Below, one piece after another: positions 32,730 to 35,750 of a DNA stretch of 64,000 nt. Location: the NCBI RefSeq assembly GCF_000142905.1, contig NW_013657662.1, forward strand, positions 124,001 to 188,000, written 5' to 3'. How positions within the stretch are numbered: position 1 is the first letter of the stretch; the number at the start of each line of letters is the position of its first letter. The notes beneath the pieces were generated by a model. It did not search any database. It was not told where the DNA came from and worked only from the letters and a program-made list of their open reading frames with translations. Source of the stretch: Thecamonas trahens ATCC 50062 (lineage: Eukaryota; Protista; Apusomonadida). The translations under genes were made by a program, and so were the position numbers.

Positions 32730-33010
32730 ACACACATGGCAGGCAGAGTAGGCATGACAGACAGAGTACGCATGGTACACATCGCAGACAGACTGCACAT
32801 GGTACACATCGCAGACAGACTGCACATGGTACACATCGCAGGTAGACTGCAAATGGTATACATCGCAGACTGCACATGGCAGACAGAGTACGCATCGCAC
32901 ACATACAACACATCGAACGCATCGTACACATACCACACATACCACATATACCACACATACCACACATACCACATATACCACACATACCACACGTACCACA
33001 CATCATACAG
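32730..33010. repeat. Compound minisatellite: about 4 x 27-bp (CATGGTACACATCGCAGACAGACTGCA) then about 8 x 9-bp (ATACCACAC/ATACCACAT)
   Basis: Direct tandem repeats visible at 32771-32880 and about 32925-33005; markedly lower GC than the flanking genes. Confidence 0.9.
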
Positions 33011-33183
33011 ACGCCCTCTCCCCCCTCCCCCTCCCCCCCCCCCCCCCCGCGACGATCGGATTCTCGCGCCTCTGCCAAGCCACAACCACAGGAGCAGACT
33101 AAGCCACCAACCACCCGCCACTAGAGCAGAGTCGGGCGTACGCTTACGCTTCTCTACGCATGCGTAGACGTAGACGTGCTTCC

Positions 33184-34890
33184 ATGGCCGTCGAAAAGGT
33201 GCCTTGCCTGCGGACGGTGTTGGCTCTGACTCTGCTGGTTGCTGCTGGCGTTGCGGTGGTGGTGGCGGCTGGCGAGGCGAGCGAGGTCGATGCCGAGGCG
33301 CGCAAAGCTCTGGCGAAGCGGTTCCCGCTACCGTGGAAGGTCTCGCGATCTGTGACGGTCTTCTACGGCGACTTTCGTGACGGAGGCTTGTGGGACTCCG
33401 AGGCTGCTGGATGCAAGGCGGCGGGCGCGGCGCCAGAGGACCACCCGCTGATGTTGCGCGTGTGCGCGGAAGGTGACGGCAAGAGCGAGGAACAGTCCGG
33501 GCAGGCCCGACGGATGAAGATGCGGTCGAACGGCTGGCTGGTCTTGCAGATCCTGAAGGAGCGTGGACTGAGTATGCGGATGGCGAGCCCGTGGGGCCGG
33601 CTCTTCTGGGTGAGGGTCGGCCTGCCCGGCGTGCCGACCGGCGACTGGCCACTGCTCGGGTATGGCGAGCTCGGTCCGCACCAGCTTGTCAACCGGATTC
33701 CTGGCATGTCAACTCTGCTGAACAAGAAGGATGCGTTCGCGCGGTCAGTGGCTGCAAAGCGGGCGGCGTTTCCGGACGGCGGCTTTGACTTTCACCCGGT
33801 CTCGTACGTGCTGCCAGCCGACTCGGCAGCGCTGGCGAAGGCGGCGGCAGCGGTGGTGGCGTCCGGCGGAGACCAGCGGTTTATCATCAAGCCAGTGTGT
33901 GGTGGGCGCGGGCAGGACATCTCGGTGGTAGCGGCTGAAGACGTGGTGGCGGCTGCGCCGGCAAACGGCGAGTGGCTCGTCCAGGACTACATCGGCAATC
34001 CACTGCTTGTCGACGGCCACAAGTTCTCCATCCGGCTTTACTTGCTGGTGACGTCGGTCAATCCACTGCGGGTCTTTGTCGCCCGCGAGGGCATTGTCAA
34101 GTTTGCCGGCATTCCGTGGTCGGCCTCGCGCGCTGCCAACGCCCTGGATCCGGCCAACATCAACATCCACATCACCAACAACGCCGCCAACGCCCACACG
34201 CCCGGCTTTGAGAGCTCGGACTCGCCCGAGGTCGACGACGTCGGGCTGCGGCGGTCGATCTCGGCCATCCGCCGCCAACTGGCGGATGCCGGTCACGACG
34301 ACGCCGCCATCTTTGCCGCCATCGACGACGTCCTCCTCAAGGCCGTGCTCGCAGTCGAGGACGAGGTCTCGGGGCTCATCGACGCGTATGTGCCGTATCC
34401 CAACAACACCTTTCAGCTGCTGGGTGTCGACGTTGACCTCGACGCCAACCTCAAGCCGTGGGTCATCGAGCTCAATGTCAACCCATCGCTCGGCTCGCAT
34501 GCTGCCTTTGAGACGCCGCACAAGAAGGAGCTCCTGCACACAGTACTGGATATGGCCGGCGCCACGCCGTTTGATGCCGCTGCCTTCAAGGCGGAGGTCA
34601 TCGCTCCGCGCGTCCACGCCGCCTCGTGCTCCGGCCAGCCCGAGCCCGGCCTCCCGCAGCAGACCTGGTGCGACGAGCGAGTTTTTGCCGCAGTCGTCGA
34701 CTTCGAGTACGAGCTCGCCATGGCCCGCGGCTTTGACCCGCTCTTCCCGCGTGCCCACAACGGGCGGACCATGGCCGGTTACATGACCACGCTCAAGGAC
34801 GCCGATGCGGCGCTTCTCGACTACGTCCTCTTCAAGTCGGCACGCCCGCCGCCGCCGAGCCCCCCGTTCCATCTCCACACTGAGCTGTAA
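33184..34890 (+). CDS. Tubulin-tyrosine ligase (TTL/TTLL) family ATP-grasp ligase with N-terminal signal peptide and C-terminal HTEL
   Basis: VNRIPG...KKD, FHPVSYVLP, FIIKP...GRGQDI, VQDYIGNPLLVDGHKFSIRLYLLVTS, HITN, FQLLGVDVDLD...PWVIELNVNPSL; N-terminus VLALTLLVAAGVAVVVAAG; ends ...FHLHTEL*. Confidence 0.9.
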   Translation: MAVEKVPCLRTVLALTLLVAAGVAVVVAAGEASEVDAEARKALAKRFPLPWKVSRSVTVFYGDFRDGGLWDSEAAGCKAAGAAPEDHPLMLRVCAEGDGKSEEQSGQARRMKMRSNGWLVLQILKERGLSMRMASPWGRLFWVRVGLPGVPTGDWPLLGYGELGPHQLVNRIPGMSTLLNKKDAFARSVAAKRAAFPDGGFDFHPVSYVLPADSAALAKAAAAVVASGGDQRFIIKPVCGGRGQDISVVAAEDVVAAAPANGEWLVQDYIGNPLLVDGHKFSIRLYLLVTSVNPLRVFVAREGIVKFAGIPWSASRAANALDPANINIHITNNAANAHTPGFESSDSPEVDDVGLRRSISAIRRQLADAGHDDAAIFAAIDDVLLKAVLAVEDEVSGLIDAYVPYPNNTFQLLGVDVDLDANLKPWVIELNVNPSLGSHAAFETPHKKELLHTVLDMAGATPFDAAAFKAEVIAPRVHAASCSGQPEPGLPQQTWCDERVFAAVVDFEYELAMARGFDPLFPRAHNGRTMAGYMTTLKDADAALLDYVLFKSARPPPPSPPFHLHTEL

Positions 34891-34895
34891 AATAT

Positions 34896-35750
34896 TCACC
34901 CATCGAGAAATGCGCGGAACGCGTTGAGCTCCGAGAGCGCCGCCGCCACCGACGAGCTCCCGGCCTCACCCGGCCCGCGGCTTGGCTCGCCACGGATGAT
35001 CGCCGGCGGCAGGTAGTCGACCTGCCGGCGGGCAGCAGCAATGCGAGCGCGCGCCGCCTCGCGCTCGCGCGACTCGACCTCGGCCTGGGCGAGCATGGCA
35101 GCGAGCGCGGCGTCGTCTGACGAGGCGCGCCAGCGCGCCGCCTTGGGTGCCTGTGTCACGGCCTGCGGGCGCGATGGCGACGAGCTCGTGCCCAGCACAG
35201 CGCCGAGTCTGCGAGTAAGCTCATCAATCTCTGCGTCTTTGGCGGCAACAGTGGCTTCTGCGGCAGCAGCACGCGCCTCAGCAGCGGCCTTCTCCTGCCT
35301 CAGTACCTGCGCCTGGGCGCGAACAGCGCGCAGCTCTGCCGCGAGCTGGGCCACCTGCGCCGCGGCCGAGTGCGCCGCAGCCTCAGACGAGCGAACGAGG
35401 CCGTCGACTGAAGCATGTGCCATGGCCCCCGCTGCCGCCGCCGTACTCCCCTGCGCCAGCGCCGCACTCGCCGCCATAGTCTGCGCCGACGCCGTGGCGG
35501 CCTCCGCCTCCAGCACCGTTGTCCGCGCCCTGTCCAACTCGCCCGCCACCGACTTCCATGCCCTCTCCACCGCATGCGCCAGGTCAATCACCTCGCCCAG
35601 CTCTGCATTCTGCATGTTGCTCATGGCCACCGCCGCGTCCGCAGCCGCAGACATCATGCCCGTTCTCACGGGTGCGGTGTGACCAGGCCAGAGCCAGCCG
35701 TGGCCGTCAGTGTCGCCGTGGCGAAAGGCCGCGCGATCAAAGGCGGGCAT
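34896..35750 (-). CDS. Ala-rich coiled-coil protein of unknown function
   Basis: ORF with a heptad-like region; start codon uncertain (35750 or the downstream MMSAA). Confidence 0.5.
   Translation of the reverse strand: MPAFDRAAFRHGDTDGHGWLWPGHTAPVRTGMMSAAADAAVAMSNMQNAELGEVIDLAHAVERAWKSVAGELDRARTTVLEAEAATASAQTMAASAALAQGSTAAAAGAMAHASVDGLVRSSEAAAHSAAAQVAQLAAELRAVRAQAQVLRQEKAAAEARAAAAEATVAAKDAEIDELTRRLGAVLGTSSSPSRPQAVTQAPKAARWRASSDDAALAAMLAQAEVESREREAARARIAAARRQVDYLPPAIIRGEPSRGPGEAGSSSVAAALSELNAFRAFLDG

What the first reader, a model, noticed from the sequence alone, without database searches (positions are those of the whole stretch)
33184..34890. TTL-family ligase with a signal peptide and ER-retrieval HTEL: candidate secretory-pathway peptide ligase
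Seen: a complete TTL/TTLL ATP-grasp core (FIIKP, QDYI..PLL..GHKF.IR.Y.LVTS, HITN, GVD...PWVIELNVNPS) preceded by a hydrophobic N-terminal segment (VLALTLLVAAGVAVVVAAG) and ending exactly in HTEL*. Established: characterised TTLLs act in the cytosol or cilium on tubulin tails, and HTEL is a functional KDEL-type retrieval signal. Inference: this enzyme resides in the ER lumen, where tubulin is absent. It would then add Glu/Gly/Tyr-like residues to secretory proteins or glycoconjugates, a poorly described lumenal modification. Having both targeting signals together makes coincidence less likely.
Basis: partly seen in the sequence, partly recalled or inferred. Interest (0 to 1): 0.8.

Follow-up and report, generated by a model that had tools for sequence, protein, structure and literature searches.

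The report
ER-targeted tubulin-ligase-like enzyme clade
This gene encodes an apparently active member of the tubulin-tyrosine-ligase-like family that, unlike every characterised relative, carries a secretion signal and an ER-retention tail, and it belongs to a small undescribed clade of such enzymes that probably modify proteins inside the secretory pathway, not tubulin.

Summary
Window 33160/33184..34890 (+) is one intronless ORF of 576/568 aa. It has a full TTL ATP-grasp core (Pfam 1.4e-47; best solved relatives are the TTLL6/7/11 glutamylases), a single N-terminal hydrophobic segment, and a C-terminal HTEL.

The interpretation survives most tests I could run:
- An exhaustive profile search of 1.84 billion proteins found two close relatives and eight more distant ones. 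Together they form a strongly supported clade of 11.
- Eight of its 10 full-length models have an N-terminal signal sequence, against 1 of 141 other TTLLs.
- The clade has its own active-site signature. The "invariant" Arg241 is Lys and Lys283 is Arg in 11/11 members, while the ATP and Mg residues are intact.
- The clade is acidic (pI about 5-6.6) where other TTLL cores are basic (median pI 9.0), and it lacks the basic microtubule-binding stretch.
- HTEL, HSEL and RNEL tails occur in three members. The host genome has an ERD2 receptor, and its BiP and PDIs end in HDEL.

ER residence is therefore plausible for this protein but is not a clade-wide feature: one of its two close relatives, and most of the distant ones, lack xxEL. 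Substrates are unknown. All evidence is computational.

The parts
33160..33216 (+). n-region of the signal sequence. The first ATG is at 33160 (adds MRRRRRAS). The second ATG at 33184 is the start used by the database gene call.
   Evidence: Net charge before the hydrophobic core is +6 for the 576-aa model and +1 for the 568-aa model.
33217..33273 (+). Hydrophobic core of the signal peptide or signal anchor (residues 20-38). An Ala-Ala-Gly | Glu site fits the -3/-1 rule for cleavage.
   Evidence: KD19 of 2.62, the only such segment in the protein. It has the same Ala/Val/Leu-rich style as the signal peptides of this genome's HDEL-ending PDIs.
33274..33510 (+). Clade-specific N-terminal extension carrying the cysteine pair C85/C102.
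   Evidence: Alignments A1 and A3. The Cys pair is shared with P0002, and both cysteines are deleted together in P0003. AF2 confidence is low here.
33511..33675 (+). TTLL N-domain (residues about 118-172).
   Evidence: AF2 pLDDT above 85 from about residue 120. This region aligns to the TTLL6 core in the fold search.
33676..34554 (+). TTL ATP-grasp catalytic domain (residues 173-465). Key residues: K190, K244, R250, R292, K314, T339, N340, R364, D424, E437, N439, V440, K455.
   Evidence: Pfam 1.4e-47. Residues were mapped onto TTLL6 through the PDB alignment and the TTLL6 structure paper. Positions are and conservation.
34555..34839 (+). C-terminal helical region equivalent to the TTLL6/7 core extension. 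It keeps the Glu..Arg.Gly.Phe..Leu-Phe-Pro motif (residues 517-530), has the cysteine pair C490/C504, and is not basic.
   Evidence: The Cys pair is shared with P0003 and deleted together in P0002.
34840..34875 (+). Pro-rich, low-confidence linker that presents the tail.
   Evidence: pLDDT below 50 for the last 10 residues. Sequence.
34876..34890 (+). C-terminal HTEL (34876-34887) and the stop codon.
   Evidence: P0002 ends in HSEL and P0007 in RNEL.

Best explanation
The ORF encodes a catalytically intact TTL-family ATP-grasp amino-acid ligase. It is translocated into the ER through an N-terminal signal peptide or type II signal anchor, and is kept there by KDEL-receptor retrieval of its C-terminal HTEL. 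In the lumen it uses ATP to ligate an acidic amino acid, most likely glutamate, through an isopeptide bond onto glutamate side chains of lumenal or secretory proteins, not tubulin. Shown by computation: the fold and catalytic residues; clade membership; clade-wide N-terminal signals; acidic surface charge; loss of the basic microtubule-binding stretch; a remodelled donor pocket; and a working HDEL/ERD2 system in the host genome. Inferred: actual translocation and cleavage, recognition of HTEL by this organism's receptor, the donor amino acid, and every substrate.
For: Family and fold: Pfam TTL 1.4e-47; TTLL6/7/11 are the best PDB sequence hits. An AF2 model built from a 93-row alignment has pLDDT 82.4 and pTM 0.85, and its top fold matches are TTLL6 at TMt 0.80-0.85.
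Catalytic residues: the ATP, phosphate and Mg ligands K125, K174, R219, T263, N264, D346, E359 and K377 (TTLL6 numbering) are all conserved.
Initiase signature: Arg sits at the Q180 position and Val at the H362 position.
Clade: the profile search of 1.84e9 representatives plus trees (FastTree 100; IQ-TREE mixture SH-aLRT 100) give an 11-member clade.
Targeting: 8 of 10 full-length members have an N-terminal hydrophobic signal against 1 of 141 outside (Fisher p = 7e-11). Loci L027 and L028 have signal-peptide first exons, and L031 has a probable missed exon.
Clade synapomorphies: R241K in 11/11 against R in 150/150 others; K283R in 11/11 against K in 144/150; Gly at the C179 position in 10/10.
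Charge: domain pI is 4.9-6.6 in 10 of 11 members, against a median of 8.99 elsewhere. The basic TTLL7 microtubule-binding segment has no counterpart.
Cysteines: pairs appear and disappear together.
Retrieval: HTEL, HSEL and RNEL tails; ERD2 is present; BiP-like and two PDI-like proteins end in HDEL and a GRP170-like protein in RDEL. HTEL retains human CES2, and removing it causes secretion (PMC4624787).
Against: There is no experimental or transcript evidence. No trained signal-peptide predictor was available, so targeting rests on hydrophobicity, charge and -3/-1 heuristics. Thr at position -3 differs from this organism's own HDEL/RDEL tails. The close relative P0003 and most of the distant clade members lack any xxEL, so ER retention is not a clade property. 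About ten cytosolic-looking TTLLs end in -IEL by coincidence. The 19-residue hydrophobic core is long for a cleaved signal peptide. Two 'invariant' donor-site residues are swapped, so the donor may not be glutamate. Free glutamate supply in the ER lumen is not established.
Confidence: 0.5

Rival explanations
1. The enzyme enters the secretory pathway, but its working compartment is the Golgi, a post-Golgi organelle or the cell surface. HTEL would then be weak or non-functional in this organism.
For: Most clade members, including the 42%-identical P0003, have signal sequences but no xxEL tail. The organism's proven-style ER residents use HDEL/RDEL, not HTEL.
Against: H[ST]EL is conserved between P0001 and P0002 at the end of otherwise unalignable tails, and RNEL appears independently in Cavostelium. 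HTEL is functional in human CES2. ATP-dependent ligation is easiest to sustain in the ER or Golgi lumen.
Confidence: 0.2
2. The N-terminal segment is a membrane anchor that leaves the catalytic domain in the cytosol, tethering a conventional tubulin or cytosolic-protein glutamylase to the ER or another membrane.
For: The hydrophobic core is 19 residues long, enough to span a bilayer. The enzyme is otherwise a normal-looking TTLL4/5/6/7-type core.
Against: The charge distribution (+1 to +6 before the core, net negative after it) predicts N-in/C-lumen. Several relatives have short, classical cleavable signal peptides. A cytosolic C-terminal HTEL would serve no purpose. The clade is acidic and lacks the basic microtubule-binding stretch. 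Paired cysteines suggest an oxidising compartment.
Confidence: 0.08
3. The enzyme is lumenal, but its chemistry differs from protein glutamylation. It might use another donor such as aspartate or another amine, or a non-protein carboxylate acceptor such as a glycoconjugate or a small molecule.
For: The two donor-contacting residues that are invariant in all other TTLL glutamylases are swapped in 11 of 11 clade members (R241K, K283R), and the loop residue next to the acceptor is Gly (roles). The acidic surface argues against acidic, tubulin-tail-like substrates.
Against: All three donor-site positions stay basic (K, R, K), as expected for a dicarboxylic amino acid. Glycylases and TTL have non-basic residues there. 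The nearest families are glutamylases.
Confidence: 0.17
4. The targeting signals are an annotation or chance artefact: a wrong start codon, an unrecognised intron, or a coincidental tail.
For: The genome has some introns (first-reader notes). GC-rich DNA gives long spurious ORFs. xxEL tails occur by chance in other TTLLs.
Against: The open frame closes 19 codons upstream of the first ATG. Both candidate ATGs precede the hydrophobic core. The alignment with P0002 and P0003 starts directly after the core. The same architecture recurs in independent genomes and transcriptomes.
Confidence: 0.03

Closest known systems
TTLL5 / TTLL4 (glutamylase initiases)
   Same: TTLL5-named proteins are the nearest named sequences outside the clade. 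Shared features are an Arg at the TTLL6-Q180 position and an aliphatic residue at the H362 position, the initiase signature. TTLL5 also modifies a non-tubulin substrate, RPGR (title and abstract of PMC13052805).
   Different: TTLL4 and TTLL5 have no signal peptide, have basic cores, and act in the cytosol or cilium. They keep R241 and K283, which the clade swaps.
TTLL6 / TTLL7 (solved structures 6vzq-6vzw, 4ylr)
   Same: These are the best sequence and fold matches (5.8e-38; TMt 0.80-0.85 over about 426 columns). The three-domain core plus the C-terminal helical extension and its Gly-Phe..Phe-Pro motif are shared.
   Different: The basic microtubule-binding segment is replaced by a non-basic loop that contains cysteines. 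The domain pI is 5.7, against about 9 for other TTLL cores. TTLL6 is an elongase with Q180/H362.
Cavenderia fasciculata DFA_09109 and Heterostelium album PPL_02503 (uncharacterised 'tubulin-tyrosine ligase family' proteins)
   Same: They belong to the same clade and share the K/R swap. DFA_09109 has a signal peptide.
   Different: Identity is about 29%. They have no xxEL tail. DFA_09109 has a C-terminal extension of about 450 aa with no Pfam match. The PPL_02503 gene model shows no signal peptide.
KDEL-type soluble ER residents such as human carboxylesterase 2 (HTEL)
   Same: A signal sequence combined with a C-terminal HTEL. Deleting HTEL from CES2 leads to secretion (PMC4624787).
   Different: The fold and chemistry are unrelated. 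Function of HTEL in this protist is untested, and its own residents end in HDEL or RDEL.
Legionella SidJ glutamylase and vitamin-K-dependent gamma-glutamyl carboxylase
   Same: These are functional analogies only. SidJ glutamylates a non-tubulin protein (abstract of PMC8548325). From my own knowledge, the carboxylase modifies Glu side chains of secretory proteins in the ER lumen.
   Different: Both have different folds and mechanisms from this enzyme, and neither is a TTL-family ATP-grasp.

Membership tests
TTL family (Pfam PF03133, ATP-grasp) | Sequence match above the curated cut-off | tested here: met
   162.7 bits against a cut-off of 20.1, E = 1.4e-47, profile positions 7-282 of 292.
TTL family (Pfam PF03133, ATP-grasp) | Three-domain TTL/TTLL fold | tested here: met
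   AF2 pLDDT 82.4 and pTM 0.85. Foldseek top hits are TTLL6, TTLL11, TTLL7 and TTL, with probability 1.00.
TTL family (Pfam PF03133, ATP-grasp) | ATP, phosphate and Mg ligands (TTLL6 K125, K174, R219, T263, N264, D346, E359) | tested here: met
   All are conserved: K190, K244, R292, T339, N340, D424, E437.
TTLL glutamylases | Invariant R241, K283 and K377 that bind the donor glutamate | tested here: not met
   K377 is kept (K455). R241 is Lys (K314) and K283 is Arg (R364), in all 11 clade members, against 150/150 and 144/150 of the other TTLLs. The charge is retained but the identities are swapped.
TTLL glutamylases | Basic microtubule-binding domain and a net basic core | tested here: not met
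   Domain pI is 5.73 with net charge -11, against a median pI of 8.99 for 150 other TTLL cores. The basic TTLL7 segment aligns to a non-basic loop.
TTLL initiases (isopeptide-forming) | Arg at the TTLL6-Q180 position and a non-His residue at the H362 position | tested here: met
   R250 and V440. Within the clade the Q180 position varies (R, Q, A, K).
Named TTLL subfamilies (TTLL1-13, 15) | Phylogenetic placement inside a named clade | tested here: not met
   The protein falls in a separate 11-member clade (support 100) outside the TTLL5-named and TTLL6-named groups and outside the genome's nine other TTLLs. Only the 150 best hits were sampled. Reference sequences of TTLL1, 2, 3, 8, 9, 10, 12, 14 and 15 were not included.
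Soluble ER-resident proteins (KDEL-receptor cargo) | N-terminal signal sequence directing translocation | tested here: inconclusive
   The hydrophobic core, positive n-region and -3/-1 site are present and conserved in the clade. No trained predictor and no experiment were available.
Soluble ER-resident proteins (KDEL-receptor cargo) | C-terminal [KRH]DEL-type tetrapeptide recognised by ERD2 | tested here: inconclusive
   HTEL is at the exact C-terminus. ERD2 is present. The genome's own residents end in HDEL or RDEL. HTEL works in human CES2. Recognition in this organism was not tested.
Soluble ER-resident proteins (KDEL-receptor cargo) | Demonstrated ER localisation | not testable with these tools
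   This needs microscopy or fractionation.

The most novel reading that the evidence does not exclude
Some eukaryotes (several Amoebozoa, this GC-rich flagellate-type protist and uncultured marine relatives) run a previously unknown ATP-dependent amino-acid ligation, a 'glutamylation code', on proteins inside the ER and secretory pathway. It would be written by a dedicated TTLL clade with a remodelled donor pocket. Acidic tails of lumenal chaperones or secreted matrix proteins would be candidate substrates.
Probability: 0.3. Interest if true: 0.9.

Novelty: new variant of a known kind. Interest (0 to 1): 0.72.

Why it matters
Every characterised TTL/TTLL enzyme works in the cytosol, nucleus or cilium, and protein glutamylation is treated as a cytoskeletal and cytosolic modification. 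A TTLL clade that has signal peptides, ER-retrieval tails in some members, an acidic surface and a clade-specific donor pocket would place this chemistry in the secretory pathway and imply a new class of substrates. The clade includes dictyostelids, which are genetically tractable and, from my own knowledge, lack cilia. The idea can therefore be tested directly by knockout, localisation and mass spectrometry. The coupled R241K/K283R swap is also a natural experiment on how TTLLs select their donor amino acid.

Tried and rejected
1. AF2 with only the three close sequences gave an unusable model (pLDDT 40). It was replaced by the 93-row run.
2. The word-index search with the 11-member alignment re-found only the three close proteins, so it was uninformative.
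3. The 'careful' IQ-TREE search did not finish in two 300-s runs. I report the quick mixture-model tree (SH-aLRT) and the FastTree. P0013 and own_L009 were left out of the 58-row tree because of their long branches.
4. I looked for a missed signal-peptide exon upstream of Heterostelium PPL_02503. The AT-rich intergenic ORFs there are not convincing, so this is left open.
5. I checked whether P0003 hides an xxEL tail. A His-Glu-Leu triplet lies in another frame near its stop, but it is not terminal, so I rejected it.
6. xxEL alone is not evidence: about ten non-clade TTLLs without signal peptides end in -IEL.
7. Five literature searches for secretory, ER or lumenal TTLLs or glutamylation found nothing relevant. 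A sixth search, for HTEL together with the KDEL receptor and HDEL, also found nothing.
8. None of the genome's nine other TTLLs shows a signal sequence or xxEL tail in its longest open frame. Those gene models are approximate.
9. I did not try to name the organism. The tools hide it, and the argument does not need it.

Full report
**1. What is in the sequence**

One search lists one ORF on the + strand from 33160 to 34890, 576 aa from the first ATG. It gives the 568-aa protein that the public collection also holds (P0001). The frame is closed 19 codons upstream of the first ATG: the open frame is 595 aa. The N-terminus therefore cannot extend upstream without an intron.

Upstream lie a CA-rich minisatellite and a poly-C tract. 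Beyond them is a divergently oriented gene noted by other readers. A script confirmed that the window translates exactly to the protein used throughout.

**2. Family, fold and catalytic residues**

- Pfam TTL matches at 1.4e-47 over residues 173-465.
- The best solved relatives by sequence are TTLL6 (5.8e-38), TTLL7 and TTLL11. The glycylase TTLL3 (1e-17) and TTL (1e-8) are far behind.
- An AlphaFold2 model from three sequences was useless (pLDDT 40). A model from a 93-row alignment reached pLDDT 82.4 and pTM 0.85, with residues 120-555 confident.
- Foldseek against the PDB ranks the TTLL6 structures first, with TM 0.80-0.85 relative to the target over about 426 columns.

I mapped the residues that the TTLL6 structure paper defines (bioRxiv 10.1101/2020.06.07.139295) through the HMMER alignment and a 161-sequence alignment. 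The ATP, phosphate and Mg ligands are all present: K190, K244, R292, T339, N340, D424, E437 and N439 (positions). The enzyme looks active.

According to that paper, one position separates elongases (Gln180 in TTLL6) from initiases (Arg) across the whole family. Here it is Arg250. The His362 position is Val440. This is the initiase pattern, meaning an isopeptide bond to the gamma-carboxyl of an internal Glu.

**3. Targeting signals**

The only strongly hydrophobic window in the protein is residues 20-38, with a Kyte-Doolittle mean of 2.62 over 19 residues. Nothing beyond residue 60 exceeds 1.7.

- It is preceded by net positive charge: +1 from the second ATG, +6 from the first.
- It is followed by an acidic stretch. 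By the positive-inside rule, this puts the bulk of the protein in the lumen, whether or not the signal is cleaved.
- An Ala-Ala-Gly | Glu site fits the -3/-1 rule.

The protein ends exactly in HTEL, behind a proline-rich, low-confidence linker.

The host genome has the retrieval machinery:
- one ERD2/KDEL-receptor gene;
- a BiP-like HSP70 ending in HDEL and a GRP170-like protein ending in RDEL;
- two PDI-like proteins that end in HDEL and have Ala/Val/Leu-rich signal peptides of the same style and length as the one here.

HTEL is the retention signal of human carboxylesterase 2, and its removal causes secretion (PMC4624787).

**4. Relatives**

The word-index search found only two close relatives:
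- P0002 is 45% identical and comes from a Tara Oceans metagenome contig.
- P0003 is 42% identical and comes from a Logan assembly.

Both begin with a hydrophobic signal, although the sequences of the signals are unrelated. P0002 ends in HSEL. P0003 ends without any xxEL.

Because the claim depends on what the relatives look like, I ran the exhaustive profile search against 1.84 billion representatives. Scores fall from 917 bits (P0003) to 331 bits (P0006), so the tight group has just three members.

Most of the next hits also carry N-terminal signals. Source names are:
- P0006, Cavenderia fasciculata DFA_09109;
- P0007, Cavostelium apophysatum, ending in RNEL;
- P0009, unnamed;
- P0010, Pyxidicula operculata;
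- P0056, unnamed.

The named organisms are all Amoebozoa (for two of them). P0009 and P0056 come from one very compact genome in a single Logan sample.

**5. A distinct clade**

A FastTree of 161 TTL domains recovers 11 proteins as one group with support 100. So does an IQ-TREE LG+C20 PMSF quick tree of 58 domains. That group is separated from the TTLL5-named sequences, the TTLL6-named sequences (names) and the genome's other TTLLs. The genome has ten TTL loci, and this one is the most divergent.

Signals within the clade:
- 8 of the 10 full-length models have an N-terminal hydrophobic signal, against 1 of 141 outside (Fisher p = 7e-11).
- The eleventh member is an N-terminal fragment.
- P0017, one of the two exceptions, has a same-strand ORF encoding a classical signal peptide about 70 bp upstream of its called start. 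This is probably a missed first exon.
- The other exception, the Heterostelium model, could not be resolved.
- A metagenome scan added two intron-bearing loci, L027 and L028, whose first exons encode signal peptides.

The clade also has its own biochemistry. Arg241, which is invariant in 150 of 150 other TTLLs, is Lys in 11 of 11 members. Lys283, which is K in 144 of 150 others, is Arg in 11 of 11. The loop residue before the Q180 position is Gly in 10 of 10. According to the TTLL6 paper, both swapped residues contact the donor glutamate. All three donor-site positions remain basic. This fits a dicarboxylic donor but does not prove glutamate.

The clade's catalytic regions are acidic: pI 4.9-6.6 and net charge -2 to -28 in 10 of 11 members. 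The other 150 cores have a median pI of 8.99, and only 9% lie below 6.5. The basic segment of TTLL7 that follows the core aligns here to a non-basic loop containing cysteines, although the terminal Gly-Phe..Leu-Phe-Pro motif is kept.

The cysteines behave like disulfide partners. C85/C102 are shared with P0002 and both are deleted in P0003. C490/C504 are shared with P0003 and both are deleted in P0002.

**6. Interpretation**

The most economical reading is a TTLL-type ligase that works in the lumen of the secretory pathway. This protein and its nearest relative are held in the ER by an H[ST]EL tail. It most likely adds single acidic residues, probably Glu, as branches on Glu side chains of lumenal or secretory proteins.

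What is shown is sequence, fold, phylogeny and the co-occurrence of signals. Translocation, retention, the donor and the substrates are inferred.

The main rival is that the enzyme functions further along the pathway. Its strongest support is that xxEL tails are confined to three clade members. A cytosol-facing anchor is disfavoured by the charge distribution, the classical cleavable signals of relatives, the acidic surface and the paired cysteines. An annotation artefact is disfavoured by the closed upstream frame and by recurrence in independent genomes and transcriptomes.

**7. Novelty**

Six full-text searches found no description of a secretory, ER or lumenal TTLL or of lumenal glutamylation. 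The library lacks most subscription journals, so this is not proof of absence. The Cavenderia and Heterostelium members are annotated only as hypothetical or 'tubulin-tyrosine ligase family' proteins. The scan's own notes hold nothing on this.

I class the finding as a new variant of a known kind: a known enzyme family in a new compartment, with a new active-site signature.

**8. Limits**

- No trained signal-peptide predictor, transcript data or model coordinates were available.
- The careful tree search did not finish.
- Only the 150 best profile hits were sampled, so weaker clade members and reference TTLL1-3, 8-10, 12, 14 and 15 are absent from the trees.
- The word search with the clade alignment was unproductive.

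Noticed in passing
window 32900-33050: A CA-rich 9/27-bp periodic minisatellite followed by a poly-C tract of about 30 bases lies directly upstream of the TTLL gene, in the divergent intergenic region. Another first-reader note (s1-749035) had already flagged it.
   Followed up: partly
window 33745-34899 (-): A 384-aa ORF runs antisense to the TTLL gene. It is one of many long spurious frames in this DNA of about 65% GC, and I found no evidence that it is a gene.
   Followed up: no
G000:C18:267297-267761 (L013): The genome's only ERD2/KDEL-receptor match lies on the same contig as the window, about 110 kb away from the TTLL gene.
   Followed up: no
L016, L025, L041, L043 (own genome): A BiP-like protein and two PDI-like proteins end in HDEL, and a GRP170-like protein ends in RDEL. 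The PDI signal peptides are long and rich in Ala, Val and Leu.
   Followed up: partly
P0080, P0084, P0098, P0114, P0116, P0119, P0122, P0141, P0152: A group of TTLLs of about 1000 aa (MMETSP/JGI sources) with no signal peptide all end in -IEL, mostly -[DE]IEL. This is a conserved C-terminal motif of unknown meaning, and a warning against reading xxEL alone as ER retrieval.
   Followed up: no
L051 and L052 (Logan SRR26424693): Two paralogues of the signal-peptide TTLL clade (P0056, P0009) come from one sample. Their contigs have only 37-40 bp between genes, which points to a very compact eukaryotic genome.
   Followed up: no
P0013 (JGI/IMG, 884 aa): A protein with an N-terminal hydrophobic segment followed by two TTL/ATP-grasp domains. 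It lies outside the clade on a long branch, and its origin is unknown.
   Followed up: no
L050 (G000:C16:107933-109183): An HSP90-family match with one in-frame TGA. It could be an intron, a pseudogene or a sequencing error.
   Followed up: no
L011 5700-5730: Near the stop codon of P0003, a different reading frame reads His-Glu-Leu, but this is not terminal. A frameshift or assembly error cannot be excluded, although two independent contigs give the same protein.
   Followed up: partly
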